A DNA stretch of 64,000 nucleotides from positions 16,004,222 to 16,068,221 of the forward strand of contig NC_092379.1 of assembly GCF_030028105.1 (NCBI RefSeq). Reading direction: 5' to 3'. The stretch comes from Mobula birostris (Eukaryota). The position numbers were made by a program, and so were the translations under genes. The notes beneath the pieces were generated by a model. The model did no database searches. It was given only the letters and a program-made list of their open reading frames with translations, and had not been told where the DNA came from. How positions within the stretch are numbered: position 1 is the stretch's first letter; each line of letters starts with the position of its first letter. Shown here piece by piece: positions 11,802 to 44,644 of this stretch.

Positions 11802-11966
<165 letters not shown>

Positions 11967-20069: not shown

Positions 20070-20334
20070 TTATTTTTTATAAACATTTGGATTGTTTGCA
20101 CAATGCTGACACACTACTTTTTCCAACAAATGTAACATATGCTGCTGGAGTTGCAAGCTTTGATTTAGTAAGAGAGTTTGTTGATCGAGAATTCTCCGAA
20201 CCTCTCTGTTTGTTTCTTCCACAGCTGTGCTTATCTTCTTTTGTTCTTCCAGCATTGACTCCATTAGTCTTATACTTTTCTTGTGCAAGTCAGCATTTGA
20301 AGCTCTCCTCTTTTTGATGGGTACCAATTCAGTT
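20070..20334 (-). CDS. MSANTD1-like protein, terminal coding exon 3
   Basis: Pyrimidine tract plus ctgtag|A acceptor. Encodes (R)TELVPIKKRRASNADLHKKSIRLMESMLEEQKKISTAVEETNREVRRILDQQTLLLNQSLQLQQHMLHLLEKVVCQHCANNPNVYKK*, resembling the MSANTD1 C-terminal coiled coil ([24 protein letters not shown]...QSLQLQ). Total CDS 254+270+265 = 789 nt = 262 aa. Confidence 0.92.
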
Positions 20335-20399
20335 CTACAGTAAGTAGAGAAGGTGCAGAATACAGGTTCAGAACTCACACTCAAAACTTGTGGTGTAAT

Positions 20400-20650
20400 T
20401 AGATTCTTTATACTTTATTGTCGCCGAACAATTGATACTAGAATGTACAATCATCACAGCGATATTTGATTCTGCGCTTCCCACTCCCTGGATTACAAAT
20501 TGATAGTAAATATTAAAAATTTAAATTATAAATCATAAATAGAAAATAGAAAAATGGGAAGTAAGGTAGTGCAAAAAAACCGAGAGGCAGGTCCGGATAT
20601 TTGGACGGTACGGCCCAGATCCGGGTCAGGAAAAGCTGTTCCCAAATCTG
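20400..20650 (-). mobile_element. Rex1-type LINE 3' tail
   Basis: Minus-strand 3' UTR with AATAAA (20414-20419) and an aaaagctgttcccaaatct ORF-end motif. Confidence 0.6.
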
Positions 20651-23600
20651 CTCCCAAATTCTGACTTGTAAAGGTGGGACTTATTGATATATTAAACCAC
20701 TGTTGTTAAAATCACTTCCACAGAAATTGGACGGATACTGAACCAACTTCAAACAATTGGATGCATATTATTCAGGCAGGCAAGTCTTGGGGTACTGCAA
20801 ATCATTTCTCTTTCATGGGGTGAAGTAATCAAGTCAGACACAAGGTGGCGCAGTGCAATAGAACATGTTTTTGCCAAGGCCTTAATTCAAATTCAGAAAA
20901 AAAAGCTGCAGACACAACAAATGTCAGCCTCTACTTTCTTATTAGTATGAATTTATATGATAATAGCTATCTGTACCCTAGAATCTCATCTGATATTAGG
21001 CAGGATCTTGGCATAGAACGAGGGTGATGAGTAAAGTTTTCTTTACTGAATTGACCAAGATTTATCTATTTGTGCCAATTATTACACCCACATTCTGACT
21101 GCCATCTGCCCTACAAACATCTAACAAACTACCCACTTCAGTTAAGTACTGCTTCCTAGGGCTAAGATAGGGTTAGCAACACACACACACACAAACTGCT
21201 GGAGGAACTCAGCAGGCCAGGCAGCATCTATGGAAAAGTATAAACAGTCCACATTTTGGGCCAAGACCCTTCATCGGGACTAGAAAGGGAGGGGGAAGGT
21301 GCCAGAATAAAAAGGTAGGGGTGGTAAAGGAGGATAGCTAAAAGGTGATAGGTGAAGTCAGTGGGGAAGGAAAGGATGTTGGTGGTTTGCCTTGTAACAG
21401 CATTCACTGATGCTCCCCCAGCCAAAAGCAGTGCATTAGAAGGAAGAGAATTTTGCTGTCATATCTGCTCCTTTCTGTTATGTCCACATTAATCAATTTG
21501 TATACTTTTCCATTCCTGCTCAGCCGTACCAGGAATTGAGTCTCTTGGTCCCTTGCTGCCTCACCACCTTTTTAGGTGTTCAACATTATTGGAGTTCCTG
21601 CTCCCCAAAATCCAGCCATGCAAAAAAGATAAACTTAATCAATTTTCCTGGTTAGAGGTTCTGACAGTGCCAAATGGGCCGACAGTCTGCACCTGGCTGA
21701 GAATGGGAAAAGTTAGCTGAAGATTTCTCTGGAATGTGTGCCTGACAACATTGTACTATTAATAAGATGTGAATTATAAAAGTAAAGAACATAAATAAAG
21801 CATTGAACATTGCAGCTCAGTACAGGCCCTTCAGCCCACAATGGTGTGTTAACCTTTTAACATTTTGTAAGATCAATTTAACCCTTCCATCCTACATAGC
21901 CCTCCATTTTCTATTTTCCTTGGAGTTTAATCCAGGTGTTCCATGCACTCACCACTGTGTTGAAACAAAACAATTACTTCTGATATTCCCCCTTATACTT
22001 TCCTCCAATCACCTTAAAATTACCTCCCCCCCACCCCCCACCCCCCCAGTGTATTCTGAGAACTGTTTAAACTGCAGCTTGACAGGTAAAAAGTAATAAA
22101 GGAATATTTTGCAGATGCATTCAGTGAACGTGTTTTTTTTGATTTCCGCATACAGTTTTAAAGAGAGCTCATTCAGTAAGGCGATATGGTTTGAGTTCAA
22201 ATATAAGAAAGGTGATTTGATTATCCTGATTATCCTGTAGGCTTCCCAATACTCGGTATGAGGAAGAAGAACAGATATATGGACAGATTTCTGAAAAAAA
22301 GCAAAAGTTGTAGTGGGTGACTAACTTCACCAACATTGATTTCCTAAAGAGCAACAGCCTTATGTGAGGCTGAATTTCATCACTGTATTCAGAAGGATTT
22401 CTGAACATAATCCAGCTAGAAGGGGAACCATACTAGACCTTGTATGGGGAAGCAGGCCTATCCAGGTGATTGAGGATACAGTGGGAAAAGATTCTGGGTA
22501 CAGAGATCACAACTCTCAAGTCCCATGACAGTTACATCTGATTGTGGGCATTATTTAAAGGCGAGCAGGTCAGAATTCCAGACTTGCATGGTTCAGTAAG
22601 GATGGCAAGGTTATGGAGCCTTGGATGCCATGTGACGTAAGTAAAAGGATGCAAGTATAAGGTTTAGGAAGCTGAAATCAGACTGAACCCGTAAGGAATA
22701 TATATAGAGCAGTAAGGAATTTAAGCATAGAATTAGGAGGGTCAAAAGGGGCCATGAAGTATCCTTGGTGAGTGGGATTATTCAAAATGCAAAGGTGTTT
22801 TACACATACATTAAAAAGTAAAGGAGAGCTAGGGAGAGGGCAGGATCACTCGAGGACAAGGGAAGGATTTTACACCCAAGCCCTGAGAAGTCTGTGACCT
22901 GTGGTGTTCTACATGGATATGTACTGGGACTCTGATGTTTGAAAAATAATAGAATATCTAAATGACAGATAATAATTAAAGCAAGTTTTCAGACATCACA
23001 AATTTGATGAAGTTCTGGATATTGAAGAAGTTTGCCAAAGATACAGCAGAATTTTAGAACAATTGTGCAATGTGTAAATCCATGTGTGGCCTACACGGAG
23101 TTTTTATAAAGTTGCAATACAATTCCAGACCTTTGAACTCAGAGTCTCAACTAATGAAGGCAAGCACGTCTTATGTCGTCTTTACCACCTTATCAACTAG
23201 CGCAACATCTTCGAGGACTTGGACCCCAAAATCGTTTTGTACAATCAACACTATTAATGACCTCCAGCCAGAATAAAGCCCATCAACGTAGATAAGGTAA
23301 TAATCTTTCTCCCAGGGAGTCTAAAACTAAAGAGCACAGGATTAAGGTGAGAGGGGAAAATTTTAATGGGGACCTCAAGGGCAAGTTTCTCCATATAGAT
23401 GGTGGTAGGTATGAGCTGTCAAAAAGGGTGATAGAGGATGGTGTGATTACATTTAAAGACATGTGGACAGGTGAATGAATAGGAAGGGTTGAGAGGGATA
23501 TGGTAAATGGTACTAGCTCAGGAAAACATATTAGTCAGTGTGAACGATTTCTGATGTAGAGCCTGTTTCCTTTATGTTCCAGATTAAATAAATTAGCACC

Positions 23601-23704
23601 AGAATAGAAATTGAGAGTATTTCTGAAAAACAGTGCTTAGTATTAGGTTCTGTGACAGCTTTCCCAACATTCTGTGTGAATTACATGCAAACCATTGAAA
23701 ATAA

Positions 23705-26700
23705 AACATGGGGCTGAATGGCACAATTCTCTGCTCCTTCGAATGCTCCACCATTCCATCGTGGCTGATTTATTATCCCTCTCCACCCATTCTCCTATGT
23801 TCTCCCCATAACCTTTGAAACCCTGACTAATCAAGAACCTATCAACCTCCATTTTAAATATACCCAGTGACTTTGCCTCCATAACATTCCGAGGCAATGA
23901 ATTCCACAGATTCACCACCCTCTGGCCAAAGAAATGCATCCTCATCTGTTCTAAAGGGAAATCCTTCTATTCTAATGCTGTGCCCTCTAGTTCTAGTCTC
24001 CCCCCACTACAGGAAACATCCTCTCCATATCCATTCTTTCATAGGCCTATCAATATTGGATAGCTTTCAATGAGGATTTCTCCCCCCCCCCCACCCCCCA
24101 TTATTCTAAATCCAGCGAGTATAGGCCCAGGACCATCAAACATCTTCATTCCCCTGATCATCCTCTGGACCTCAAGTGCCAGCACAACTTTTCTAAGATA
24201 AGGGGTCCAAAACTGCTCACGATACTCCAAGTACAGTCTGACCAATGTGTTATAAAGCCTTACCATCATATCCTTGCTCTTCTCGAAATGAATGCTAACA
24301 TTACATTTGCCTTCCTTATCATTAACTCAACTTGCAAGTTAACCTCTAGGGAATCTTGCACAAGGACTCTCAAGTGCCTTCGCACCTCAGATTTAAGAAT
24401 TTTCTCCCCAATTAGAAAGTAGTCTATGCCTTTATTCCTTCTACCAAAGTGCATGACCATCGACTTCCCGACACTATATCCCATCTGCCTCTCCTTTGCT
24501 CATTCTCTCAATCTGTCTGTCCTTCTGCAGTCTCTTTGCTTCCTCAACACTACCCGCCCCTCCAACTTTCTTTGTATCCTCTGCAAACTTGGCCACAAAG
24601 CCATCAATTCCATCATCCAAATCATCAATATATAATATGAAAAGAAGTGGTCCCAGTACATACCCCTGTAGAACACCACTTGTCACCGGCAGCCATCCAG
24701 AATAGGGCCCCTTTATACCCACTCTGCCACCTGCCAAACAGCCAATCCTCTACCCATATTAATAACTTTCCTGTAATGCCATGGACTCTTCTAAATAGCC
24801 TCGTATGGCACCTTATCAAAGGACTTCTGAAAATCCAAGTAAACAACATCCACTGACTTCCTTTCTCTTTCCTGCTTGATATTTCTTCAAAGAATTCCAA
24901 CAGATTTGTCAGACAAGATTTCCCCTCAAAGCAACCATGCTGACTTTGTCCTAGTAGCACACTCAAAACGCTGGAGGAGCTCAGCAGGCAGCGTCTATGG
25001 AAAAAAGTACAGTTGACATTTCGGGCTGAGACCCTTCATCAGGACTGGAAAAAGAGATGAGGAGTCAGTAAGAAAGTGGGGGAAGGGAGGAAGAACCACA
25101 AGGTGATAGGTAAAACCGGGAGGGGAGAGGGGTGAAGTAAAGAGCTGGGAAGTTGATTGGTGAAAGGGATACAGGGCTGGAGAAGGGGGAATCTGACAGG
25201 AGAGGACAGAAGGCCATGGAAGAAAAAAAGGTGAGGAGCACCAGAGGAAGGTGATAGGCAGGTAAGCAGATAAGGTGAGAGGGGGAAAGTAGGAATTGGG
25301 AATGGTGGTTTTCCACAGGTTCAAAAGAATCGATGATCCTACCATCAGGTGGGAGGCTACCCACAGAGAATACAAGGTGTTGCTCCTCCAGCCTGAGTGT
25401 GGCCTCATTGTGACAGTAGAGGAGGCCATGGGCTGACATGTCAGAATGGGAATGGGAAGTGGAATTAAAATGGGCGGCCACTGGGAGATCCCGCATGTTC
25501 TGGCGGACGGAGTGTGGGTTATCGGTGAAGCAGTCTCCCAATCTACATCGGGTCTCACTGATGTACCCAAGGCCACATTGGGCGCACCGGATACAATAGC
25601 TGACCCCAACAGAGTCACAGGTGAAGTGTCGCTTCACCTGGAAGGACTGTTTGGAGCCCTGAATGGTAGTGAGGGAGGGAGTAGGTGTAGGGGCAGACAT
25701 AGCACTTGTTCCACTTACACGGATAAGTGGGTGAGGACAAGGGGAAACCCATCCCTGGTGGGGTGGCAGGAGAATTGGATGAGGGCAGACGTGCACGAAA
25801 TGGAAGAGATGCTGTTGAGGGCAGCATTAATGGTAGAGCAAGGGAAGCCCCTTTCTTTGAAGGAGGAGGACATCTCCTAGTTCTAGAATGAAAAGCCTTC
25901 TCTTGAGAGCAGATGCAGCAGAGACAGAGGAATTGAGAGAAGGGGATGGAGTTTTTACAAGTAACAAGGTGGGAAGACATATAGTCCAGGTAGCTGTTAG
26001 AGTCAGTGGGTTTTAATAGACATCAGTAGATGAGCTGTCTCCAGAGATAGAGACAGAAAGATCGAGAAAGGGGAGGGAGGTATCGGAAATGGACCAGGTA
26101 AATTTGAGGAAGGTAGAGGCAAAGTTAATGAAGTCGACAAGCTCCACATGTTTGTAAGAAGCAGCACCAATGTAGTCGTCGATGTAGCATAGGAAAAGTT
26201 GGGGACTAATACCAGTGTCGGCTTGGAACATAGATGTAGCCAACAAACAGGCAGGCATAGCTGCAACCTGCGTGAGTGCCAGTGGCTACACCTTTTGTTT
26301 GAAGGAAGTGGGAGGAGCTGGAGGAGAAATTAAGAGTGAGAACAAGTTCTGCCAGACAGGGGGGAGTGGTGGAGGAGGAGAACTGGTTGGTTTGGTAACC
26401 AGAAAGAAACCGAGAGCTTTGAAGCCTTCCTGGTGGGGGATGGAGATGTATGGCAAATGCACATCCATTGTGAAAAGAAGATGTTCGGTACCAAGGACTT
26501 TGAAATCGTTGAAAAGATCAAGAGTGCGTGAAATGTCATGGAAGTAGGTAGGAAGGCACTGAATGAGGAAGGAACTATCACCGAGTCGAGGTATGCAAAT
26601 ATAAATTCAGTAGGGCAGGATCAAGCAGAAACAATGGGTCTACCAGGACAGGCAGGTTTATGGATCTTGGGCAGGAGATAGAAAAGGGAGGTGCAGGGTG

Positions 26701-27865
26701 AGGGAACTATGAGGTTGATGGCAGTGGATGGGAGATCCCCAGAGTTAATAAGGTTGGTGATGGTTTGGGAGACAATGGCCTGGTGCTCCTTAGTGGAGTC
26801 CTGTTCAAGGGGTAAGAAGGAAGAGGTGTCTGACAGTTGTCATCAGGCCTCAGCAAGGTAGAGATCAGTGCACCAAACTACTACAGCACACCCTTTAGCA
26901 GGGGGTTTGATGGTGAGTTTAGGATTAGTGCAGGGAGTGTGGAGAGCAGTGCATTCAGAAGGAGTAAGGTTGGAACTTGAGGGAAGACTTTGCCCTGCTT
27001 TATCATGTGCTTTCAAGTGCCCCGAAACTTCATCCTTAATAATGGATTCCAACATCTTCCCAATCGCTGAAGTCAGACAAATTGGCCTATGATTTCCTTT
27101 CTTCTGGCTTCCTCCCTTTATAAAGAGTGGGGTGACATCTGAAAATTTCCTGTCCTCTAGAACCATTCCATAATCTAGTGATTATTGAATGATCACTACT
27201 AATGCCTCCATAATGTCTTCAGCTACATCTTTCAGAACCTTGGTGTACAGTCCATCTGGTCTAGGTGACATCTACCTTCAAACCTTTCAGCTTCCCAAGC
27301 ACCTTGTCTTTAATAATAGCAACTACACTCACTTATACCCCCTGACGTTCTCAAATTTCTGGCGTATATACTAGTGTTTTTCACAGTAAAGATGAATGCA
27401 AAATACTTAAGGCATTTGTTTGTCCACCAATGCTACCTCTCCAGTGTCATTTTCCAGCTGCCCAATATCCACTCTCACCTCTCTTTTACTCTTTATATAT
27501 CTGAAAGTAGTATTTTGTTATTATTGGCTAGTTTACCTTCATTATTTAAGCTTTTCTCTGCTTCTGTTCTTCAATTGCCTTCAATTGGTTTTCAAAAGTT
27601 TCCCAATCTTCTAACTTCCCACTAATTTTGTTATATGCCCTCTCTTTTGCTTTTATGCTACCTTTGACTTTCCTTGTCAGCAACAATGGCCTCATCTTCC
27701 CTTCAGAATATTTCTTCATCTTTGGGTGTGGGTGTGTATATATATATCCCATCATCCCTGCTAGTGTCCCCTTTCAAAGAACTTTAGCCAGCTCCTCTCT
27801 TATGCCTATATAATTCCATTTGCTCTACTGTGATACTGATAAATCTCACTATCTTTTCCCTCTCA
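23705..27865 (-). mobile_element. CR1 LINE ORF2 (about 2 kb, split by a Penelope insertion)
   Basis: RT motifs VTSGVLQGYVLGPLLFILYIDDLDDGIDGFVAKFAEDTK, SQHGCFEGKSCLTNLLEFFE and GNHRPICLTSAIGKMLES. Confidence 0.9.
24953..26985 (-). mobile_element. Penelope-like element (RT plus GIY-YIG), decayed
   Basis: RT YIDDYIGA and FTWSISDTSLPFLDLSV; GIY-YIG YCIRCAQCGLGYISET; TSD GACTTTGTCCT / GACTTTGCCCT. Confidence 0.9.
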
Positions 27866-28184
27866 AACAACTTTTTCCAGTGTATTGCATAGGAACAGAG
27901 GAGTGTTTACAAGCTCCTTGTGAAGATTTTGTTGACTCCCTTTAAAAATTAAGTTTTAAAAGAAACTTGGTGTAACAATATTTTCTCTGAGGTCTCACTC
28001 TTAACTATCCAGCTTGAATCCAAATTTTGACTGGTGCCTTAGTCATTCCAGTCATTGTAATTTTATCAACAAATGAAATGGAAATAATGGCTGCTAATCA
28101 AAACCATTGTAACAACCCCTAAATTCATAAGTAACTTGCTATTCCATATGGGGAGAAAACAATTGAGAGCGGAGTCCCATTAAA

Positions 28185-28725
28185 CCCAAATCATTCCAGT
28201 CTGACACACCAGTCCATAGACTCCTCTACTGTCACAATGAGGCCACGCTTAGGTTGGAGGAGCAACACCTTATATTCTATCTGGGTAGCCTCCAACCTGA
28301 TGGCATGGACTTTGATTTCTCAAACTTCCGGTAATTGTTCTCCTGCTTTCCTTCACCATTTCCCATTCCCATTTCCTCACTCACTTTATCTCATTACCTG
28401 CCCATAACCTCCCTCTGGTGCTCTTCCACCTTCCCTTTCTTCCATGGCCTTCTATCCTCTCCTATTAGAATCTCCCTTCTTCAGCTCTTTTTCTTTCACC
28501 AATTGACTTCCCAGTTCTTTACTTCAACCCCTCCCCCACTCCTGGTTTCACCTATCCCCTACTACCTGTACTTCTTCCTCCCCTTTCCCCCACCTTCTTA
28601 CTTTGGCTTCTCGTCTTTTTTTCTCCAGTCCTGAGGAAGGGTTTCGGCCCAAAACTTCGACTGTTTATTCTTTTTCACAGATGCTGCCTGGCCTGCCGAG
28701 TTCCTCCAGCATTTTGTGTATTGCT
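28185..28725 (+). mobile_element. Penelope 3' fragment
   Basis: LRLEEQHLIFYLGSLQPDGM coding remnant plus pLTR with a mutated hammerhead. Confidence 0.8.
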
Positions 28726-28783
28726 CACTCCAGTTTGGGATTGATCCCGTAATTAAAATGTCAAATTATTACGTTTGGCTTAC

Positions 28784-29053
28784 CTCAGTTGTGAAGAATG
28801 AAAACTAGATGAATTTTCTGTGAGGTCAGACTCAGAAGAAGTTCCCTCAGATATCACGACATCATCATTCGGAAATGTTTGTTTCAGTGAGGGTGATAGA
28901 GTTTCTGATTTGGTTGCTGAAGGTAATTGTATTATATCCTCAGATATACCGGATTCATCCTGACCAGAGAACTGAGCAAGCATCCTGTGGATAGCTTCAT
29001 AATAGGGCCAGTATGAAGAGGAAGCTGCACTTCCACACGTAGCCTTGAGTTTT
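28784..29053 (-). CDS. MSANTD1-like protein, coding exon 2
   Basis: caactag|A acceptor and AG|gtaagc donor; 270 nt, phase 2-2, no stop codons. Encodes (R)KLKATCGSAASSSYWPYYEAIHRMLAQ... followed by a Ser/acidic-rich linker. WPYY completes the trihelix Myb/SANT domain. Confidence 0.92.
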
Positions 29054-29949
29054 CTAGTTGAAATATGAAATATTAGTACAATGTGTTAATCATAAAGCTC
29101 AAAGAAAATAAGTTTAGTATTAAAATTTCATTAATAAGGATATTACATTACATAATTAAATGTTGAAGTTTTATTAGTCTATAAAATTAAATCAAAAGTC
29201 ATCTTGTCTGCCACAATGAAAGAGTAAGATTCAGAAGGTAAAGAAGTACCCTTTGTTTCCCGTAGGTTTTAACAATGCAGAGGTCATGCAGTTGTAGACA
29301 ATATAAAGGAATAGTCCTTGTACAGTTAACATGTACTGTATATTCAAAGTAGTAAGATTCTCAAATGACTGCAATAAAATCATAAACTTTCAATGTACAT
29401 GATAATTTGATAAACAAAATCATGATCTGAGAAGCACGTAGGCAGTAACCACTGATTATCATTTGCAGTAATAAGTTAGCTAAAAAAAGTGCATGAACTT
29501 GCAGCATCCATAATTTTCTTACATTGAATCGTAATTCTGTGTGTGGAATAGAGTCCGAGAGTCATAGAACACACTAGCAAGCCAGTCAGCATTACTCATC
29601 CCATGTTGACCACGATGCTGATCTAAACCGGTCCCATTTGTCTGCGTTTAGTCCAGATCCCTTTCTAAGCCTTTCCTATCCATGTGCCCATTCAAGTGTA
29701 TTTTAAATGTTTTAATTCAACCTGCCTCTACCAATTTGGCAGCTTGTTCCAAACGTACACCACCTGCTGTGTGGTGGGAAAAAGTCTTGGCTCTCACATC
29801 CCCTTTAAATCTTTCTTCCTCACCTCTAGTTTAGACTTGCCTGCCCTGGGGAAAACTGTGACTATTCATGAATTAGTTAGATGAATGAAACTGGTTTGTG
29901 TGGTAGATTTTCTGCTTGGAAGAAAATCTATGTCAGTAACACTGTTAAT

Positions 29950-30950: not shown

Positions 30951-30960
30951 TATGTTGGAG

Positions 30961-31617: not shown

Positions 31618-32659
31618 ACCTGATAGAAGTGTATAAGATGATGAGAGGCATTGATCATGTGGACAGCCAGAGGCTTTTTTCCCCCAGGACTGAAATGGCT
31701 AACATGAGGGAGCTTGGAAGTAGTTACAGTGGGAATGTCAGAAGTAGCTTTCCACACAGAGTGTGGTGGGTGCGTGGAATGCTCTGCCAGCGACAGTGGT
31801 GGAGGCGGATACAATGGGGTCATTTAAGAGACTCTTAGATAAGTAGATGGAGCTTACAAAACTCGAGGGCTATGTGGTAGGTAAATTCTGGGCAGTTTCT
31901 AGAGTAGGTTATGTGGTCAGCACAACATTGTGGGCAGAGGTCTGTACTGTGCTGTAGAGTTCTATGTTCTGAATCGTGAATAGTTACTGAAATTTGCAGT
32001 GGTTCAGTACTAATCCCTTTTCTTATCCAGAAGAGTAAAATAATGAGGTAGTATACAGATAAAGGATTTAAAAAGTATTAGCAGGTAATTAAGTCGCCCA
32101 AGTACAGAGAAAATTATTATGCTGAGAATAAAGCTAATAGAGTTAATCAAACATATAAAGGGAAAATATTGTCATCTCAATCCAAAAAAAATTCAAACAA
32201 GTTAAATGGCAAACCATGCAAATTTTTCCACAATGTAAATAAGATCTTTAATTGACTTGCAACTTCAGAACTATTGATTTTTTCAAAGCAGAGAAGGAGA
32301 CATTTAACCCATAAACCTTAGTACCAGTTCAAATTGCATCTCAGAGCTCTCTGTTTTAATTCTGCCTCTCTGGTTGTCTCCCACCGTTGCCTATGAAGAG
32401 TTTGTATGTTCCCCCTGTGGCTGTGTGGGTTTCCTCTGGATCCTCCAGTTTCCTCCCACAGTCCAAAGACATACCAGTTGGTAGGTTAATTAATCATTGT
32501 AAATTGTCCTGTGAATAGGCTAGAGTTAGACTGGGGGATTCTGGGTGACACGGCTCAAAGGGCTGGAAGGGCCTACTCCGTGCTGTAACTCAATAAAAAT
32601 AAATAAAATATACTTCTAATACCTAATTCTCAAACAATTGACAAAATAAGTTATTCTCT

Positions 32660-33560
32660 TGTTGTCAAATGTTGTGGATCTTTGTTGGACTGCCCCTAAC
32701 TTTGTCACTGGTGAGGAATACAATTGTTCTTAGGCAGGTCCCTGGAGGTCATGATTTTTTCCACTCATTTCTGTGGGTTCTCAAAATAATAGGGTCCCAT
32801 AGACTTTGCATAATTGGATTTTGTAGTGCCCGAGAGGGTAGATCCACCTGCTACCAACACCAAGATTCTCAATGCCATTACAAATGGTCCTCCTCCATTC
32901 TGAGTTGTGATGAGCCAACAATTCCATTGAGTCAATGAGAAAGTTTCACCCTTCCATGGAAATTTTGGCTCAAACCTTAAATAATTTCCTGTGTCCATCT
33001 TTCGTCATAATGGATTTCTGAGCAGAGTGCCTATTTTTTTGGAGTTTTGTATCGAGCCCAAAAAGCCTTATGAAGAGCCCATTGAGTACTGGTTCCCTTA
33101 TCCTAGCAGTATATTTGGATGGTTCTATAGACACCTCACTGATGCTGGCTCTCCAGTGTTTTGATATGCCTGCAAGTAAGCACTTGTACAATTCAACAAC
33201 CAAAGGCTTCTCTTGTGTCCTGAGTGTTTGCCTTTAAAGACAAGTGGTTCATGAGAAATGGGAGCCAGGCCACATTTACCAACCTCTTGTCATGGACTTC
33301 CATTGTTGGTAATCATTGTGCAGAGGAGGCAGGTTGGCAGGCGACCTTTTCTTGTAGAAATGAGCCAGTGATGACTTTGAGCTCGACCTCCAATTGCACA
33401 CATGTGCAAGCACCATCTGCACATTGATGAGTGAGGTGGGATTGACTTTGGTTCTAGGGCGGGGACAAAGTAGGTGCAACAGTTTCTCAGTTGTACTGAC
33501 AATTAGTCTCATTGTTGAAAGTAATGTGCAGCATTGTAGTGAGAAACACTGAAAGAAGAA
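32660..33560 (-). mobile_element. RTE-clade LINE 3' fragment (old)
   Basis: Minus-strand remnant ...DGHRKLFK...WELLAHHNSEWRRTICNGIENL, resembling the RTE ORF C-terminus. Confidence 0.55.
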
Positions 33561-34161
33561 AATATTGAAAAACTGCAAATGGTGGAATATTAGCTACTTG
33601 GCAGTCCTCTGAGACCTTTCCTGAAGCTAGATGCAAAGATCTTGGTTGAAGCCCCATCAATTTCATCTTGCACTTCTCTTAATAATCTGATATCTTCTGT
33701 AAATCTTATTAATAATCTAATAACCTAATTCTCTTAATAATCCCATTAGGTCCTGGGGATTTATCCACCTTAGTGTTCTTTTAGAAAGCCAACACTACCT
33801 CTTACTATATCTCAAAATACACTTCGTATTAGCATGCTCCAGACTGATCTCATCGTCTTTCTCATCCTCCTTCAAGGTAATTACTGATGCAAAGTTCCCA
33901 TTTAGGACCACACTCACATCCTCCATCTCCAAGCACATGTTCCTGCCCTTTACCCTTAGTGATCTTACCCACTCCCTAGTTATCCACTTGCTCTTGATGT
34001 ATGTAGAGAGTGCCTTGGGACTCTCCTTAATCCTACTTGTCAAAAACTTTTCATAGACCTTCTTGCCTCTGCTAATTCTCTTAAGTTCTTTTCTATCTTT
34101 ATAATTCTCTAAGGCTCTGTTTGATTTTTTTTTAATTTTCTAAACCTTTTCATGTTTTCTT

Positions 34162-34395
34162 CGTGTTGGGCACGTGGCCAGGTGGTTAAGGCGTTCGTCT
34201 AGTTATCGCAAGGTTGCTAGTTCGAGCCTCAGCTGTGGCAGTGTGTTTGTGCCCTTGAGCAAGGCACTTAATCACACATTGCTCTAGTCTGTGCGAGGAG
34301 TGGCGCCCCACACAGACTTCCAGTCTGCACCTTGTAAGGCATGAAAATGCCCGACGCAGGCCTCTCATGGTCTGAGTCAACGTCCCCTCCCTCCC
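34162..34395 (+). mobile_element. CORE-type tRNA SINE
   Basis: A box TGGCCAGGTGG, B box AGTTCGAGCC, CORE-like GTGCCCTTGAGCAAGGCACTTAA and a (TCCC)n tail; inserted in a CR1. Confidence 0.7.
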
Positions 34396-34553
34396 CTTCT
34401 TTACTAAATTTATCCACTTCCCCATTCAAGGTTCCCTTACCTTGCCATCCTTGTCCTTCCTTCTGACACAACATACCTGTCTATTGTATTTCTTTATTTT
34501 CCTGTAAAGGCCTGCAAGAAATTGAATCTTAAGGTGGTATATGGTGACATGTA

Positions 34554-35109
34554 CACTCAGGGTCACTTTATTAGGGTCACCTGGTCACCTCAATAATGCA
34601 AATATCTAATCAGCCAATCACTTGGCAGCAACTCAATGCACGAAAGCATGCAGACATGATCAGGAGGTTCAGTTGTTTTTAAGACCTAAAATCAGAATGG
34701 GGATGAAATGTGATACAAGTGACTTTGACAGCAGAATGCTTACGGGTGACAGACAGAGTGGTTAGAGTATCTCAGAAATTGTCAATCTGGAATTTTCACA
34801 TGGTCTCTAGAGTTAACAGAGAATGGTGCAAAAAAAACATCCAGTGAGCAGCTGTTCTGCAGGTGAAAATCCTTTGTTAATGAGAGAGGTCAGAGAAGAA
34901 TGGCCAGACTGGTTCAAGCTGTCAAGAAGGCAACAATAACTCAAATAACCACACGTTACAACAGTGGAGTGCAGAACAGCATCTCTGAATCCACAACACA
35001 TTGAACCGTGAAGTGGTTGCGCTACAGCAGCAGAAGATCACACTGGTTTCAAATTTGGTGGCCATTTTATTAGGTACATTCCTGTACCTAGTAAAGTGGT
35101 CACTGAGTA
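34554..35109 (+). mobile_element. Tc1/mariner non-autonomous element
   Basis: TA-flanked TIRs of the CACTCAGTGGCCACTTTATTAGG family; transposase N-terminal remnant. Confidence 0.85.
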
Positions 35110-35584
35110 TATATCTACTTTCATAATAAATTTACTTTGACTGTCCTGGTCTCTCTTCAGTTGGTCATCACACACCCTCCATATATCAGATGTGAACATG
35201 CCCCGAAGTTGCTGTTCCTGCCTAATACTCAGCAGGTCATAGAACATCTATGGAAAGGAATAAACAATCAACATTTTGGGTTGAGACCCTTCATTAGGAC
35301 CAGCCATTCCATAGATGCCACCTGACCTGCTAAGTTTCTCCAGCATTTTGTGTGTGTGTTACTCTGGATTTCCATCTGCAGAATTTCTTGTGTCTTTGAA
35401 AGATTTTTTTTTGTTTAAACACACAAGGAGTGATTGAAATTTGAAACACATTGCCAGAAGTGTAGGTGAAGTCAGTTACAATCATTAAGATATATTTAGA
35501 CAGGCATTTATACAGACAGGTCTTAGAAGAATATAGACCTAGTACACAGGCAAAAGGGATGAGTATAAATAGGCAAGGAGTTCA

Positions 35585-36055
35585 GCTACACACACAAAAT
35601 GCTGGAGGAGCTCAGCAGGTCAGGCAGCATCTATGGGGAAAAAGTAAACAGTTGATGTTTCAGGCTGAGACCCTTCTTCAGAAAAGATGAGAAGTCAGAG
35701 AAAAGGTGGGGAAAGGAAGGAAGAAGTACAAGGTGGTAGGTGATAGGTGAAACTGGGAGGGGGAGGGGTTGAAGTAAAGAGCTGGGAAGTTGATTAGTGA
35801 AAGAGATAAAGGGCTGGAGAAGGGGTAATTGACAGAAGAGGACAGAGGCCATGGAAGAAAGGGAAGAGGGAGGAACATCAGAGGGAGGCTATGGGCAGGG
35901 AAAGAGATAAAGAATGGTGAAGGGACGGGGGGGGCGGGGGCGGGAGACAGTTACGGGAAAATCAAGGTCGATGTTCATGCTATCAGGTTGGAGGCTACCC
36001 AGATAGAATATAAGGTGTTGCTCCTCCAGCCTGTGTGTGGCCTCATCGCAGCAGT
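35585..36055 (-). mobile_element. Penelope 3' fragment
   Basis: Peptide DEATHRLEEQHLIFYLGSLQPDSMNID plus pLTR. Confidence 0.8.
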
Positions 36056-36739
36056 TACAATCAATCTTAGTAATCACCCCTTGAGTGTGTAAAAAAAGTT
36101 CAGCATGAACTTGATGGGTCAAAAGGCCTGTTTTTACTACTTCTAGACTCCATAACCCTGAAATAATTAGATACCCAAAACTGCAGGAAAATCCTATTAT
36201 CTCCTTCGCACACATATACATCAAGAATTCTAGTTTTGTCTTCTTTATGCAGTTCTGCTTTTGAATATTTGTATCTATATATCCATTCTATACTACTTCT
36301 TTCCATTTAACACTTAAGTTGTATTTCTATCATGTCCTCCAAAAATAAACAGAGCTTGCTTTTATCTTGATACCTCTAATAAATGAAAGGCACCCCAAAA
36401 TGCTTCCTTGATATTTAAATTAAAAAGCAGTCCTACAAATGGCAATGAAAGAAGTGGCATAATAATTTGTTTTCATCTGTTTTAAGATACACGTTGGATA
36501 AGGTTTTTGAAGAGATTTCTTCCACATTTTGATATGGTAAAAAGGAATACTTATGTCAACCAGAAACTAAAATCAGTTTAACACCTCATAGAAACACTTC
36601 TAACAAAGCCACAACCTTCACAGCCCAGATAATGTAACAGGTCAAGTAATGTGTAGGAGGGGAGAAATTGTCTTGAAGCCCTGCATCAGTCCTAAATTTA
36701 TAAAACATCAGTTAAGCACAGCTGGAATATTTGTACATT

Positions 36740-38450
36740 CCTAATAACACACATTAGGAAAGATGCGATTGCACTGGAAAGAGTGCAGAGAAAATTCACT
36801 ACAATTTGAATGACCTTAAAGTGTATTAAAGTAGATAAATACCCAGAGTCTGACGTACCCAGACATTGTGGGAAGCTAGCGAAGAGGTTACTGAAGCCCT
36901 TGCAGAAGTAGTTTGCTTCATCTTTGGCCACAGGTGAGGTTCTGGGGTACTGGAGTATCAGTGTTTAAAAGGTGTAGCAAAAACAAGTCAGAAAATTACA
37001 GACCGGTGAGTCTGACATCAGTGATGCAAATTCTGTGCAACAGGATCTACCAACATTTGGAGAGATGGCATCCAATTCAGGATAGTCAGCACACAAGCTA
37101 ACGAATTTTTTGAAGTTCTTTGAGGTAACCAAGAAGGCAGGTTGAGGATAGGATAGTGGATGTTATCTTTATGAATTTTAGCAAGGTACTTCATAGTAGG
37201 CTGGTCTGGAATGTTAGATTGCATTGGATCCAGAGGGACATAGCAGAATGGATTCATAATTGGCTCAGTAGTAGGGAGCAGAGGGTGATGGTCAGGGATT
37301 GTTTCTCAGACTGGCGGTCTGGGTTTAGTGGTGTTCCATAGGGACTGAAATCTTTGTTAGTGAATGTACAAGACATGGTTAGTAAGTTTGCAGCTGATAC
37401 TGAAATAGGTGTTGTAAACAGTGTAGAAGATCTACAGAAGGATTTTGATCAGCTAAGGTACATGGGCTATGGATTGACAAGTAGCTTTTAATCCAGATGT
37501 TGTTCTTTCTCGCACCTTGTGGCACATCAGGCAGCATTTTGCCGTTTCCGTACTATCTGACTTTTTTTTATACGAGGCTGAGTTACTAACTCGACACTCA
37601 GCCCAGTGCAGATGGAAAGCGTGGAAGGAGCCAGCCAGATTTGAACTGGGACCATTCACATTGAAGTCCAGTGCTGATAACACTGGCTTAATTTCAATCC
37701 AGATAAATGTGAGGTATTTTGTTTTAGAATATCAAAGGGTTTATACAGTGAGTACTAAGGTCCTGGGAGTGTTATGGAACATGATCAACATTTCAAAGTC
37801 ACCTAGATAGGAGAGGTTTAGAAGGCTGAGTCAAAAGTGGACAGGTGAGATTAGCTCACCAGGCAGTAGTCAGCATGAACAAGTCGGCCAAAGGGCCTGG
37901 TTCAACGCTGTATGAATAAAAGAATACCTGATGGTGCTTTAGCTACAAGGAGAGATTAGATAGACTGGTTTTCTTTTTACTTAGAGCAGCAGTTGAGGAC
38001 GGACCAATAGAGGTGTACTAAATTGTGAGAGGCAGAGATAGAGTAAATAGGAAAGGTTTTTCCCCCATGGTGAAGATGTCAGAAAACAGAGAACAAGAGC
38101 CTTAAGGTGAGGAGTAAGAAGGGACCTGAAGAAGAAATTTCTCACTTCAAGGGTGTTACCCTCTAAGCGCACTGGCTGAGGCAGGTGATCTGATTAACAT
38201 CATCTCAAATGAAATTTAGTGGTTTCATAGATACCAGGAAAAGTTGTCTTAAGGCAACAGCCTTATTGGCATTGATCAGCTAGAAATTTGGGTGGAGCAA
38301 CGTCAGGTGGAATTTAATCCTGATGAATATGAATTTGTGTGTCTTGGAGGGTAAGAAGGATAGTGCATACACAGTAAATTATAGGAACTCTAGGGAGTAT
38401 TGATAAACAGAGAGATCTTGGAGTGTAGGGGAATTACTAGGACAGGCTGG
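36740..38450 (+). mobile_element. CR1 LINE fragments with an inserted SINE
   Basis: ENYRPVSLTSV, DVIFMNFSK and KFAADT motifs. Confidence 0.7.
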
Positions 38451-39854
38451 TTTGAGATATCCAGGAATTGGATTTGTTAAATTGTGATTACTATCATCAC
38501 ATGTACTCGGTACAGTGAACACCTTGCTTTTGTATACCATCCATGTAGATCATTTCATTCCAACAGGGAAAGCAATCACAGAAAGCAGAATAAAGTGTCA
38601 CAATTACAGACAAAGTGCAGAGTGAGCAGACAATATTGTGAAAGGCCATATCAAGGTAGTTTGTGAGGTCAAGAGGTCAGTTTACTGCACTAGGGAACTG
38701 TTCAAAGGTCTTACAATAGCTGGATAGAAGTTGTCCCTGAGCCTCAGTACCTTCAGGCTTTTGTATCTTCTGCCCGGTGGGAAGGGAGTTGGAAGGCATG
38801 CAAAACAAAGGTTTTCACAGTGCCTCAGTATATGTGACAATAATAAACCCATTTTCCAAGTTACAAGTCCAATTGAGTTTAGTTATGAGAGGAAGTTACT
38901 GACTCTCCCTCTCTAGAACGAAAGCTATGAAAGGCCTGGTCACTGAGGAGGTGCAGCATTTCAGAATCCTGATGGTTTCCTCCTTAGTGCATGCAAGATG
39001 TGAGCCAAGGGCCAGAGTTTGCTGTGGATGGAAGTCAGGGTGGGGAACCCCAGAGGTCAGCAATGAGGGTAGTTTTGTGGCCAGACCTGGGTTCAGGAAT
39101 GCATGTACATCTCCTGTTCCTTTCAAACTCAAGTGTTCACAGGAAAACTTATTATACCACAATGTAATGTGTTAAAAGAAAAAGATGAAATTGAGGTGTG
39201 TTTGGGGGTGTAATAGGCGGTAGTCTAGACAATCCACTTGTACAGTACTGAAGGAGTTTTACCAAAGATAGATTTCTGGACAGATAGGGTTTGAAAAGAG
39301 AGCAGTTGTTATTGAGCTGGGATAATATCAAAGGATGGAGCAGGCTGCAGGAGCCAGACGGCAGCTTGCTGTCCCTTGTTTTGTGTTTGTTTCGAGATCA
39401 GCGTCTTTCAATCCAAAAGCTGTGCAACGGAAAAATTGATTTTTGTGTACATGTGGCAAAAAAGCTGTATGCATTTGAATTGATAGTCTATAATTGTGTC
39501 AAGTTCTGGGTGGAAGGGGGATGACTGGAGAGGCTACCGCAGGGTCATGAGTGGTCAGACATGTGTAAGGCCCGAGGTCACCAATAGTAAGGTGGGTGTG
39601 TGAATACTAAGAACACCAACATAAATGAGTAATAGACATTGTAAAATCTGACACCCTGTCACAAACATAGAACAAAACCTGATTAATGGCTGCTTTGGTG
39701 TGTGGATCTCGTTTGCACAAACAGTTTTAATGTGAGCACTGTACAGCATACAGACCTTGGACAAGAGTCTGTGGTACCAGCACACAGACATAACACAGTT
39801 TATGATGAAATTTCATTATAATATACAGAAAGTGATGCAATACCATAGAATTTC

Positions 39855-40135
39855 TATCAGAATCAAGTTTATTATCACCGGCATGTGACGTGAGATTTGT
39901 TAATTTAGCAACAGCAATTCAATGCAATACATAATCTAGCAGAGAGGGAAAAAATAATAATAATAAATAAAACATAATAAGTAAATCAATTATGTATATT
40001 GAATAGATTTTTAAAATGTGCAAAAACAGAAATACTATATATTATAAAAAGTGAGGTAGTGTCCAAAGCTTCAAAGTCCATTTAGGAATCGGATGGCAGA
40101 GGGGAAGAAGCTATTCCTGAATCGCTGAGTGTGTG
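39855..40135 (-). mobile_element. Rex1 LINE 3' tail
   Basis: Closely similar to the 3' tail of the Rex1 copy at 57312-58445. Confidence 0.8.
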
Positions 40136-41077
40136 TATTCTCTAAGTTTTTTTAAACCAAAAACTTAAGAATAATAGGGGAGATTTTGTGCTTAACAATT
40201 CTAACTTACACTTCAAGGAAAAGCTGCCTTACAATTAACAAATCTTCCAGTATAGACTGCTGGGAAAATTCACTTTGTGAGGTCTTGTACATTAAGAAGC
40301 TGAAGGTATAAAGAGGTTATCAAAACTAGCTTTGTTCAATCAACAAGGTCGTGCTCCAGATTCAGTTTGTTAAAACACCAAAAACATTTTAAAAACATTC
40401 CCTTTCTGAATACTTCTGAAACATGTAAAATGGTTTTAAAATGTAAACATATTTAAATGAGATGAAAGATAAAAAAAATACTTGGGGAAAAAAACTAAAA
40501 TATTTACAACACTTCCAGTTTCAAACACCTTCACCACTTCAAATAATTTAAATTAGCAAGCTGCTAGAGGTTTATATGTAGAAAAAAAATGGCAAGATTT
40601 GAAAGAGTAGTTCTAAGTCTTAAATCATTTATTTCCATTAAAATCAATGAGAAAATATCTCTGATGCATACTGTCCAGGCAAGTTCTTATTATAAGTGAT
40701 GTTCCTCATTGAACACCCTAGTGACTCCAATGCTGGAAGGCAGTTTGGTGGCTCTTTCCGCTTGGATTTTGAACACAGATACACGGAATTCCAAATGTTA
40801 CCATCAGTTTTGCAGAGAAATGACTTGGTTTGCTGCAAGTTTCACCATTATTACTCTGCAAAATCCAGGCCGTTGCTTTCTAAATTCTTACATTAAACAC
40901 TCAATAAAATTTCCATGTTTTGTAGCTGCTCTAACAATAAAAGGAATGTTGCCATTTTCCAGAGATATTGATTATTCTTAGAATTGATGAGCAGTACCAA
41001 TATAATACAGAAAATAATTCTCATAGAAAGCAATACCTCAGGTTTAATACACTTTACAGTACGATTATAATGCTTAC

Positions 41078-41331
41078 CTGTACTGAAAGGTTAGATTAGT
41101 AACTTTAGTTCTTATTTGATCTTTATCACGGTTTATCCCAGTGGCTTCATAAAATTCTTCAGCTATCTTTTCATATACTTTAGCATTTCTCTTGGCTGTT
41201 CGAAGATCTGATAAATACTCATTCCATATACGTATCAGAACACTTGTTTCAACCTCAGTCCAGTTGCTTGATCGCTTTGGTTTGTCTATTTGAGCAGCTG
41301 ATCTATTGCTGCCACTGTTACAAGCTGCCAT
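41078..41331 (-). CDS. MSANTD1-like Myb/SANT DNA-binding protein, coding exon 1 (nested antisense in RYR1 intron)
   Basis: ATG in strong context (AAAATGG) with an in-frame TGA 15 nt upstream. Encodes ...KRSSNWTEVETSVLIRIWNEYLSDLRTAKRNAKVYEKIAEEFYEATGINRDKDQIRTKVTNLTFQY, resembling MSANTD1 RNWTDAEM...KRNAKVYEKMA...KITNMTFQYR. Donor AG|gtaagc, phase 2. Confidence 0.93.
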
Positions 41332-41354
41332 TTTGGAAATACATCAGCGTATCC

Positions 41355-44630: not shown

Positions 44631-44644
44631 CAACAAGAGAGATA

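What the first reader, a model, noticed from the sequence alone, without database searches (positions are those of the whole stretch)
20070..41331. Complete antisense MSANTD1-like gene nested inside a 37.9-kb RYR1 intron
Seen in sequence: three minus-strand exons (41331-41078, 29053-28784, 20334-20070) with GT-AG sites and phase-2 junctions splice into a stop-free 262-aa ORF. It has a trihelix Myb/SANT domain (NWT...W...KRNAKVYEK...TNLTFQYRKLK...WPYY), a Ser/acidic linker, a basic NLS-like PIKKRR and a coiled coil. The ORF track shows these only as three unconnected fragments. Established knowledge: this is the MSANTD1 architecture; MSANTD-type genes are linked to the Myb-like ORF of Harbinger transposons; human MSANTD1 lies near HTT/RGS12, not in RYR1. 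Inference: the divergent linker and different locus point to a separate paralogue (or a relocated copy). The intact frame, across introns full of decayed TEs, suggests purifying selection.
Basis: partly seen in the sequence, partly recalled or inferred. Interest (0 to 1): 0.88.

Follow-up and report, generated by a model that had tools for sequence, protein, structure and literature searches.

The report
Ray MSANTD1 gene inside RYR1 intron
The three exons form a real, intact gene for a small DNA-binding protein, but it is the ordinary MSANTD1 gene that public annotation already lists for manta ray and other cartilaginous fishes, here lying backwards inside a large intron of a muscle calcium-channel gene.

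Summary
Three minus-strand exons (41331-41078, 29053-28784, 20334-20070) have GT-AG sites and phase-2 junctions and give 262 codons plus a stop. They lie in a 37,899-nt intron (11935-49833) of a plus-strand RyR1-type gene.

It is not a new gene. The three exon translations are exact substrings, in order, of RefSeq XP_072127219.1, [quoted passage not shown], 262 aa. Proteins of this type carry that name in 12 cartilaginous-fish species.

No second, bony-vertebrate-type MSANTD1 of a cartilaginous fish turned up. On a Myb-domain tree, the cartilaginous-fish and bony-vertebrate MSANTD1 proteins form one clade among 121 other Myb/SANT proteins. Contigs of two runs, RNA by the tool's guess only, stop at the exon 3 acceptor, and short skate-type contigs hold the spliced coding sequence.

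Two points stay mildly interesting. The locus differs from the human one, which lies downstream of HTT. A long branch separates the two clades (41% identity between them, 82% and 66% within).

The parts
41078..41331 (-). MSANTD1 coding exon 1 (ATG to donor CAG|GTAAGC). Encodes residues 1-84 and two bases of Arg85, covering most of the trihelix Myb/SANT domain.
   Evidence: Pfam PF13837 at E 1.8e-14. Exact substring 1-84 of P0296 (Mobula birostris XP_072127219.1).
29054..41077 (-). MSANTD1 intron 1 (12,024 nt, GT..AG, phase 2).
   Evidence: One ORF with a weak reverse-transcriptase match lies inside it (30266-30661).
28784..29053 (-). MSANTD1 coding exon 2 (270 nt). Encodes the end of the Myb domain (KLK...YWPYYEAIHRML) and the Ser/acidic linker.
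   Evidence: Exact substring 86-174 of P0296. The equivalent residues 115-182 are disordered in the model of P0156.
20335..28783 (-). MSANTD1 intron 2 (8,449 nt, GT..AG, phase 2).
   Evidence: One ORF with a weak reverse-transcriptase match lies inside it (24474-24737). A high-copy insert of about 255 nt at about 20403-20657 is absent from two related species.
20070..20334 (-). MSANTD1 coding exon 3. Encodes the basic patch PIKKRR and a long helix, ending in the TAA stop.
   Evidence: Exact substring 176-262 of P0296. The equivalent region is helix 188-254 in the model of P0156. A contig of run X1 is identical over 19975-20325, and a contig of run X2 ends its fit at 20336.
19815..20069 (-). 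3' untranslated region, minimum extent; its true end is not determined.
   Evidence: the X1 contig reaches down to 19975 and the X2 contig to 19815. AATAAA-type signals lie further on, near 19625 and 19470. X1 and X2 show no unique coverage at 19488-19722.
11935..49833 (+). Host intron of the RyR1-type gene (37,899 nt). It holds the whole MSANTD1 gene.
   Evidence: for the donor after 11934 and the acceptor before 49834.
1079..1352 (+). RyR1-type exon, equivalent to about residues 2093-2188 of solved RyR1 chains.
   Evidence: 149-155 bits to RyR1 chains, 126 to RyR2 and 106 to RyR3..
9665..9779 (+). RyR1-type exon ([38 protein letters not shown]).
11802..11934 (+). RyR1-type exon ([45 protein letters not shown]), the last one before the host intron.
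49834..49928 (+). RyR1-type exon ([31 protein letters not shown]), the first one after the host intron.
41392..41795 (.). Unit of 404 nt framed by a 19-nt inverted repeat, starting 61 nt upstream of the ATG. It holds 5 exact AAAGCTTT palindromes plus variants. It may be promoter or 5'UTR sequence; its function is untested.
   Evidence: 5 of the window's 6 AAAGCTTT lie at 41410-41764, against 2.55 expected for the whole 64 kb; arms at 41392-41410 and 41777-41795, 2 mismatches, 0 of 100 shuffles give 2 matches.

Best explanation
This is the MSANTD1 gene of a manta or devil ray. It is the single MSANTD1-type gene of cartilaginous fishes and is already in RefSeq with exactly this three-exon model.

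Shown:
- The gene is intact and has canonical splice sites.
- It is conserved in length and order from chimaera to rays.
- Its orthologue is found spliced on short contigs of skate type.
- It lies antisense inside a 37.9-kb intron of the RyR1-type gene.

Inferred:
- The protein enters the nucleus through the basic PIKKRR patch.
- It pairs with itself or a partner through the 67-residue C-terminal helix. It would then act as a sequence-specific transcription or chromatin factor, as proposed for the MSANTD family.
- Nesting in RYR1 is most simply a matter of position, with no proven functional link to the host gene.
For: Gene model:
- Searches confirm the exons, GT-AG sites and phase-2 AG|A junctions.
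- The exon translations are exact substrings 1-84, 86-174 and 176-262 of P0296, XP_072127219.1 'myb/SANT-like DNA-binding domain-containing protein 1 [Mobula birostris]'.

Family:
- Exon 1 matches PF13837 at E 1.8e-14.
- (query P0002) gave 88 proteins of 551 candidates. 10 named rows from 9 cartilaginous-fish species are called MSANTD1 and are 62-100% identical to the query. The next best is Latimeria at 46%.
- adds Mobula, Leucoraja and Amblyraja, giving 12 species.
- In one search (query Latimeria MSANTD1), the best 120 of 306 hits are 118 named bony vertebrates and 2 unnamed ORFs. Those two are teleost-type. No cartilaginous-fish protein is among them.
- On a Myb-domain tree of 142 rows, the 8 cartilaginous-fish rows (including window exon 1) and 13 bony rows form one clade of 21 with SH-aLRT 99.
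- Among the 150 representative hits, the exon 3 module is found in 6 proteins. One is P0002 and the other 5 have the bony-vertebrate MSANTD1 sequence type; 3 of those 5 are so named.

Conservation:
- Window exons against Callorhinchus give 72/84, 55/89 and 51/87 identical residues, colinear.

Expression:
- The X1 contig (351 nt, 0 differences) covers 19975-20325, with almost nothing at 20334-20380.
- In the X2 contig (244 nt), 115 letters fit 20222-20336 and 129 fit nothing in 19300-20700.
- Logan ORFs P0159 (195 aa on a 914-nt contig) and P0299 (285 aa on a 1009-nt contig) span all three exons.

Fold:
- The AF2 model of P0156 has helices 26-45, 49-64, 70-94 and 103-111 (block pLDDT 71-95), a disordered stretch at 115-182, and one helix at 188-254.
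- The best Foldseek rows, all weak, are DNA-binding domains: Sap1 (E 0.016), the GT-1 trihelix (E 0.042, TM 0.73) and Zeste.

Literature:
- PMC9392472 (sections 5, 8 and 14 read) reports MSANTD1 as Harbinger-derived, present from cartilaginous fishes to mammals, with three exons in human, and under purifying selection.
Against: - The locus differs from the human one, where MSANTD1 lies downstream of HTT (PMC13396422). The window shows only RyR1-type exons around the gene.
- The branch between cartilaginous-fish and bony-vertebrate MSANTD1 is long: 1.41 + 0.26 changes per column. Mean identity is 41% between the groups, against 82% and 66% within them. Simple orthology therefore needs early acceleration.
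- X1 and X2 are RNA only by the tool's guess, and their loose letters at the acceptor were not shown. I saw no junction read for 41078/29053.
- No Foldseek match reached E 0.001.
- DNA binding, nuclear import and dimerisation are all untested.
- One related species (run X7) has a 2-nt deletion in the last codon that moves the stop.
Confidence: 0.85

Rival explanations
1. Hidden paralogy or separate fixation. The cartilaginous-fish gene and bony-vertebrate MSANTD1 would be sister copies of one Harbinger-derived progenitor, fixed at different loci (inside RYR1 versus beside HTT). Each lineage then kept only one copy. The shared name would hide the lack of one-to-one positional orthology.
For: - The locus in this window (RyR1-type intron) differs from human, where the gene lies downstream of HTT.
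- The internal branch is long, 1.67 changes per column in all.
- Identity between the groups is at most 44.7%, while the lowest values within them are 68.5% and 53%.
- 18 alignment columns are invariant within each group but differ between them.
- The published synteny covers only human, mouse and gar (PMC9392472 fig. 2 legend).
Against: - It needs complete reciprocal loss. No cartilaginous fish has a bony-type copy and no bony vertebrate has a cartilaginous-type copy.
- The two groups form one clade on the domain tree.
- They share the whole architecture and, judging from isoforms, the intron positions. In one search, P0039 joins FQYR directly to SEERPVKKRK, and P0026 and P0032 diverge right after FQYR.
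- A single gene that moved once explains all of this equally well.
- The locus was seen in one genome only.
Confidence: 0.13
2. A decaying or unexpressed relic: a transposon-derived ORF or pseudogene whose frame is open by chance or because it is young.
For: - The introns and flanks are full of repeat fragments (reverse-transcriptase matches; very high-copy stretches).
- No run on record as RNA holds the stretch.
Against: - The frame is intact over three exons with canonical splice sites.
- All 8 full-length proteins compared from other cartilaginous-fish species are 260-264 aa and colinear with the window's exons.
- Short contigs hold the spliced coding sequence.
- In run X6, exon 3 shows 3 listed differences in 265 nt. 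The adjacent 3' flank shows 6 listed differences plus indels in 223 nt (2 of that piece's differences were not listed).
- No DDE_Tnp_4 transposase was found among the 20 of 109 ORFs tested.
Confidence: 0.02

Closest known systems
XP_072127219.1, myb/SANT-like DNA-binding domain-containing protein 1 [Mobula birostris] (P0296)
   Same: All three exon translations are exact substrings at residues 1-84, 86-174 and 176-262. Arg sits at the two split codons, and both proteins are 262 aa.
   Different: Nothing at the protein level. The public record's gene coordinates and its neighbours were not visible to me.
MSANTD1 of bony vertebrates (human 278 aa, three exons, downstream of HTT; PMC9392472, PMC13396422)
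   Same: - Both have an N-terminal Myb_DNA-bind_4 trihelix, the FQYRKLK and WPYY motifs, a Ser/acidic linker, a basic KKRK-type patch and a C-terminal helix (LEEQKK..AVEET.REVRR..QSLQLQ..LLEK).
- 50 alignment columns are invariant across all 23 sequences.
- They form one clade on the Myb-domain tree.
- Both have three coding exons.
   Different: - Identity is only 34-45%, and 18 columns are fixed-different.
- The locus here is an RyR1-type intron, not the HTT neighbourhood.
- The 5' end here is AT-rich (GC 0.337 at 40001-42000). The human gene has a 5' CpG island (PMC13396422).
Myb-like protein of Harbinger/PIF transposons, and other domesticated copies (NAIF1, MSANTD2-4)
   Same: They share the trihelix Myb/SANT-like DNA-binding domain. 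The published origin of MSANTD1 is such a transposon gene (PMC9392472, sections 5 and 14).
   Different: - The gene spans about 21 kb, with two long introns.
- No transposase ORF was found among the 20 ORFs tested.
- The C-terminal helix module was found only in MSANTD1-type proteins among the 150 representative hits.
Plant GT-1 trihelix DNA-binding domain (PDB 2jmw, 2ebi), S. pombe Sap1 and Drosophila Zeste DNA-binding domains
   Same: These are the best structural neighbours of the modelled domain. GT-1 gives a target-normalised TM of 0.72-0.73 at 26% identity. GT-1 is also the only DNA-binding chain in the sequence search of the PDB, at E 0.3.
   Different: All matches are weak (Foldseek E 0.016-0.37). 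They support the fold class only, not family membership or DNA specificity.

Membership tests
MSANTD1 family (sequence and architecture) | N-terminal Myb/SANT-like trihelix domain (Pfam Myb_DNA-bind_4, PF13837) | tested here: met
   - exon 1 at E 1.8e-14, 54.3 bits against a cut-off of 27.
- three helices (26-45, 49-64, 70-94), block pLDDT 81-95.
MSANTD1 family (sequence and architecture) | Colinear match over the whole length, including WPYY, the basic KKRK-type patch and the C-terminal helix | tested here: met
   - every exon aligns in order to all 16 proteins compared.
- among 150 representative hits, exon 3 matches 6 proteins. One is P0002 and the other 5 have the bony-vertebrate MSANTD1 sequence type; 3 of those 5 are so named.
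MSANTD1 family (sequence and architecture) | Groups with named MSANTD1 proteins to the exclusion of other Myb/SANT proteins; reciprocal best hits | tested here: met
   -.
- one clade of 21 among 142 rows, SH-aLRT 99. Before the tree I dropped 22 MSANTD1-like fragments or isoforms, and rows aligned over fewer than 56 residues.
MSANTD1 family (sequence and architecture) | Three coding exons with introns at the same places | tested here: inconclusive
   - There are three exons here, and three in human by PMC9392472.
- Same positions are inferred only from protein isoforms. P0039 joins FQYR to SEERPVKKRK, and P0026 and P0032 diverge after FQYR.
- No bony-vertebrate genomic DNA was read.
- Fish read-through forms (FQYRQV...) did not fit a simple phase-2 GT donor, and I left that unresolved.
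MSANTD1 family (sequence and architecture) | Already annotated under this name | tested here: met
   identical to XP_072127219.1.
Positional orthologue of bony-vertebrate MSANTD1 | Lies in the HTT-MSANTD1-RGS12 neighbourhood | tested here: not met
   - In this window the gene lies inside the RyR1-type intron 11935-49833.
- The human position comes from PMC13396422; the RGS12 neighbour is recalled.
- Only 64 kb were visible. Other cartilaginous fishes could not be checked.
Positional orthologue of bony-vertebrate MSANTD1 | Only copy in its lineage, with no second copy of the other type | tested here: met
   - no bony-type protein from a cartilaginous fish, and no cartilaginous-type protein from a bony vertebrate.
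- Limits: these are annotated or ORF-called proteins only, and only 120 of 306 rows were listed.
Mobile Harbinger/PIF transposon | DDE transposase ORF (DDE_Tnp_4) beside the Myb-like ORF | tested here: not met
   20 of the 109 ORFs of 70 aa or more were scanned. They gave only RVT_1 fragments and one ALKBH8_N match. The other 89 ORFs were not scanned.
Mobile Harbinger/PIF transposon | Compact unit with terminal inverted repeats and a 3-bp target duplication | tested here: not met
   - The gene spans 20070-41331, with introns of 12.0 and 8.4 kb.
- The only inverted repeat found frames a 404-nt unit upstream of the ATG, not the gene. I saw no matching target duplication beside it.

The most novel reading that the evidence does not exclude
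The 'MSANTD1' of cartilaginous fishes may not be the positional orthologue of bony-vertebrate MSANTD1. It would be a sister copy of the same Harbinger-derived progenitor, fixed inside RYR1 while the other copy was fixed beside HTT. That would mean the progenitor was still moving or duplicating when jawed vertebrates split.

The 404-nt unit framed by an inverted repeat, with five AAAGCTTT palindromes 61 nt upstream of the ATG, could then be a binding platform for the protein itself.
Probability: 0.13. Interest if true: 0.5.

Novelty: already known. Interest (0 to 1): 0.2.

Why it matters
As a gene it adds nothing new. The model is already in RefSeq, and a 2022 paper (PMC9392472) describes the family as a Harbinger domestication present from cartilaginous fishes to mammals.

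What could matter is small and specific. That paper's main text shows synteny for human, mouse and gar only. Here the gene sits in a RyR1-type intron, not beside HTT, and a long branch separates it from the bony-vertebrate genes. If the RYR1 position holds across sharks, rays and chimaeras, it would show one of two things. Either a domesticated transposon gene moved after domestication, or two sister copies were kept reciprocally. That bears on how and when the domestication happened.

My searches found no paper that discusses this. 'MSANTD1' with 'RYR1' gave 1 paper, a goat-genomics review by its title, not opened. 'MSANTD1' with 'shark' gave 2 papers, unrelated by title and abstract. 'ryanodine receptor' with 'nested gene' and 'intron' gave 3 papers, unrelated by title and abstract. 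Supplements were closed and may hold synteny data for cartilaginous fishes.

Tried and rejected
- Pfam on exons 2 and 3 gave only sub-threshold matches: RunxI at E 0.02, and Phage_TAC_3 at 21.8 bits against a cut-off of 22. I take these as low-complexity or helix noise.
- The bacterial promoter and terminator scan of the 5' region has no meaning for a vertebrate gene, and I do not use it.
- Foldseek against the PDB gave no match at E 0.001 or better. The sequence search of the PDB with exon 1 gave only colicin S4 (E 0.005, no domain stretch) and GT-1 (E 0.3).
- I could not compute dN/dS. No coding DNA of relatives was available, and one search left 34 differences unlisted. I report only the listed ones.
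  - 20301 is synonymous.
  - 20325 changes Leu to Phe.
  - 20074 changes Lys to Thr in the last codon.
  - Run X7 has a 2-nt deletion in the last codon.
- I tried to read intron positions from read-through protein forms. Mammalian forms fit a phase-2 GT donor. Fish forms (FQYRQV...) did not fit simply, so I left this inconclusive.
- A search of the scan's earlier findings by sequence gave nothing.
- I considered whether the RyR host could be a paralogue lying near HTT. The exon scores best against RyR1, but the window shows no neighbouring genes.
- The joined spliced protein of the window was never built, searched or folded. Each exon was handled on its own, and the full-length work used database proteins (P0002, P0156, P0296 and others).

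Full report
**What is in the sequence.** On the minus strand there are three exons.

| Exon | Coordinates | Boundaries | Length |
|---|---|---|---|
| 1 | 41331-41078 | starts at an ATG, ends CAG\|GTAAGC | 254 nt |
| 2 | 29053-28784 | follows CTAG\|, ends GAG\|GTAAGC | 270 nt |
| 3 | 20334-20070 | follows TGTAG\|, ends in TAA | 265 nt |

The lengths add to 789 nt, which is 262 codons and a stop. Both junctions split a codon as AG|A, which reads Arg.

Translated one by one, the exons give three parts:
- Exon 1 gives a Myb/SANT-type N-terminus.
- Exon 2 gives KLKATCG...YWPYYEAIHRML followed by a Ser/acidic stretch.
- Exon 3 gives TELVPIKKRR followed by a long heptad-like stretch.

Each coding frame is free of stops before the TAA. 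The other two frames of each exon hold 1-13 stops.

**The host gene.** The ORF at 1054-1374 matches solved ryanodine receptors. It scores 149-155 bits to RyR1 chains (residues about 2093-2188), 126 bits to RyR2 and 106 bits to RyR3, over 39 distinct sequences in all.

Further plus-strand exons were located with short motifs and read at their borders. The four exons lie at 1079-1352, 9665-9779, 11802-11934 and 49834-49928. The intron between the last two is 11935-49833, or 37,899 nt. It holds the whole minus-strand gene. 'RyR1-type' rests on one 106-residue exon.

**What the gene is.**
- Exon 1 alone matches Pfam Myb_DNA-bind_4 at E 1.8e-14.
- A search of 1.84 billion representative proteins with exon 1 gave 271 hits at E 0.001 or better. 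The second-ranked was a 263-aa protein, P0002, 93% identical.
- Searching with P0002 gave 88 proteins among 551 candidates. Ten named rows from nine cartilaginous-fish species are called 'myb/SANT-like DNA-binding domain-containing protein 1'.
- Those nine species are Pristiophorus, Heptranchias, Scyliorhinus canicula, S. torazame, Stegostoma, Mustelus, Rhinoraja, Hemitrygon and Callorhinchus (two rows).
- Cluster look-up added Mobula birostris, Leucoraja erinacea and Amblyraja radiata.
- The Mobula protein (P0296, XP_072127219.1, 262 aa) contains the three exon translations as exact substrings at 1-84, 86-174 and 176-262, with Arg at 85 and 175.

So the gene and this very exon model are already in public annotation. 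The window very likely comes from Mobula birostris or a very close relative.

**Is it a separate paralogue?** I found no sign of a second MSANTD1-type gene in cartilaginous fishes.
- In one search every cartilaginous-fish row is of the P0002 type, and the next best hit is Latimeria at 46%.
- In the reverse search with Latimeria MSANTD1, 306 proteins passed E 1e-15 and the best 120 were listed. Of those, 118 are named bony vertebrates and two are unnamed ORFs. The two ORFs are closest to salmonid or teleost sequences.
- A Myb-domain tree of 142 rows held window exon 1, 7 cartilaginous-fish proteins, 13 bony-vertebrate proteins and 121 other Myb/SANT proteins. It puts the 21 MSANTD1 rows in one clade with SH-aLRT 99. 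Before the tree I dropped 22 MSANTD1-like fragments and rows aligned over fewer than 56 residues.
- Among the 150 representative hits, the exon 3 module is found in 6 proteins. One is P0002. The other 5 have the bony-vertebrate MSANTD1 sequence type, and 3 of those 5 are so named.

Whether RYR1 is its usual position in cartilaginous fishes is untested.

**What remains unusual.**
- Human MSANTD1 lies just downstream of HTT (PMC13396422, passages read).
- PMC9392472 reports conserved synteny for human, mouse and gar (section 5 and figure legends read). Here the gene sits inside a RyR1-type intron.
- On a tree of 24 full-length proteins, the cartilaginous-fish and bony groups are separated by a branch of 1.41 + 0.26 changes per column. 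Within each group the tip and inner branches are mostly 0.02-0.4. The bootstrap had not fully settled.
- Mean identity is 82% within cartilaginous fishes, 66% within bony vertebrates and 41% between them. 18 columns are invariant in each group but differ between them.

Two histories fit these data. In one, a single gene moved once and changed fast early on. In the other, two sister copies were kept reciprocally. I favour the first because it needs no reciprocal loss, and because the two groups share the whole architecture and, as far as protein isoforms show, the intron positions.

**Expression and constraint.**
- No run on record as RNA holds the stretch.
- Two small runs, guessed by the tool to be RNA, behave as RNA would. 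X1 has a 351-nt contig with no differences over 19975-20325 and almost nothing at 20334-20380.
- X2 has a 244-nt contig of which 115 letters fit 20222-20336. The other 129 fit nothing in 19300-20700. That is expected for a splice at 20334, because the exon 2 end and the intron end share AG. The loose letters were not shown, so this is indirect.
- X6 and X7 are genomic DNA of related species and run through the acceptor into the intron.
- Independent support comes from two unnamed Logan ORFs of skate type. P0159 is 195 aa on a 914-nt contig, and P0299 is 285 aa on a 1009-nt contig. Both carry sequence of all three exons, so they lack the introns.
- All 8 full-length cartilaginous-fish proteins compared keep a length of 260-264 aa. 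Chimaera matches the window exons at 72/84, 55/89 and 51/87 residues.
- In X6, exon 3 shows 3 listed differences in 265 nt. The adjacent 3' flank shows 6 listed differences in 223 nt plus indels. Two of that piece's differences were not listed.
- The paper reports dN/dS below 1 for MSANTD genes (section 8). Its table is in a supplement that I could not open.

**How it most likely works.**
- A model of the Hemitrygon orthologue was built with 22 other MSANTD1 sequences; the window's exon pieces match that protein at 251 of 260 residues. The model has three helices (26-45, 49-64, 70-94) and a fourth (103-111), with block pLDDT 71-95.
- It also has a disordered stretch at 115-182 and one helix at 188-254.
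- Its best structural neighbours, all weak, are DNA-binding domains: Sap1, the plant GT-1 trihelix (TM 0.73) and Zeste.
- The fold class and the architecture are shown.
- Three steps are inferred: nuclear import through PIKKRR, sequence-specific DNA binding, and pairing through the C-terminal helix. They agree with what PMC9392472 (section 14) proposes for the family.
- A functional tie to RYR1 is not indicated.

**Surroundings.**
- Of 109 ORFs of 70 aa or more, I scanned 20 against Pfam. Only reverse-transcriptase fragments and one ALKBH8_N match appeared, and no Harbinger transposase.
- A 404-nt unit starts 61 nt upstream of the ATG. It is framed by a 19-nt inverted repeat (41392-41410 and 41777-41795; 2 mismatches; 0 of 100 shuffles give two matches).
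- That unit holds 5 of the window's 6 AAAGCTTT palindromes, where 2.55 are expected in the whole 64 kb.
I confirm the clustering and add the framing repeat. Whether this is a small inserted element, a promoter or a binding platform is untested.

**Verdict.** The family assignment and the nested, antisense position are right. The gene is already known and annotated, so novelty is 'already known' and interest is low. The only open lead is the different locus and the long branch relative to bony vertebrates. A look at public annotations would settle it.

Noticed in passing
window 41392-41795: A 404-nt unit is framed by a 19-nt inverted repeat (2 mismatches). It holds 5 of the window's 6 AAAGCTTT palindromes plus variants (AAAACCTTTT, AAAAGGGTTTT) and starts 61 nt upstream of the MSANTD1 ATG. 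I saw no clear target-site duplication. It could be a small inserted element, a promoter or a binding platform.
   Followed up: partly
window about 20403-20657 and 19764-19846: Contigs of two related species (runs X6 and X7) skip about 255-257 nt just upstream of the exon 3 acceptor. X6 also skips 83 nt in the 3' flank. These stretches have word depths in the thousands to over a million, so they are high-copy repeats present in this genome but absent at these sites in the relatives.
   Followed up: no
window 20073-20074 (last codon of MSANTD1): Run X7 (organism F, genomic DNA) has a 2-nt deletion in the last codon, which would move the stop downstream. Runs X2 and X6 have T>G at 20074, which changes Lys to Thr, as in the Hemitrygon protein ending FKT.
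   Followed up: partly
protein P0299 (Logan ORF, 1009-nt contig; skate type): This is a full-length MSANTD1 coding sequence with 25 extra residues between the exon 1 and exon 2 parts (after FQYR). It looks like an extra cassette exon or an alternative splice form in skates.
   Followed up: no
window 40001-42000: This is the lowest G+C of the window (0.337), at the 5' end of the gene. There is no CpG-island-like 5' end here, whereas the human gene has a 5' CpG island according to PMC13396422.
   Followed up: no
window 57790-58518 (-): The longest repeat-derived ORF tested matches reverse transcriptase (RVT_1, E 1.1e-9) followed by an ALKBH8_N-type segment (E 2.8e-8). Weaker RVT_1 fragments lie at 24474-24737 and 30266-30661 inside the MSANTD1 introns.
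   Followed up: no
protein P0001 (Alligator sinensis, 2166 aa): The top hit by score in the representative search is an uncharacterised alligator protein with 8 Myb/SANT-like stretches. Several other hits are long proteins with 4-10 such stretches. They appear to be tandem arrays of this domain in reptiles and fishes.
   Followed up: no
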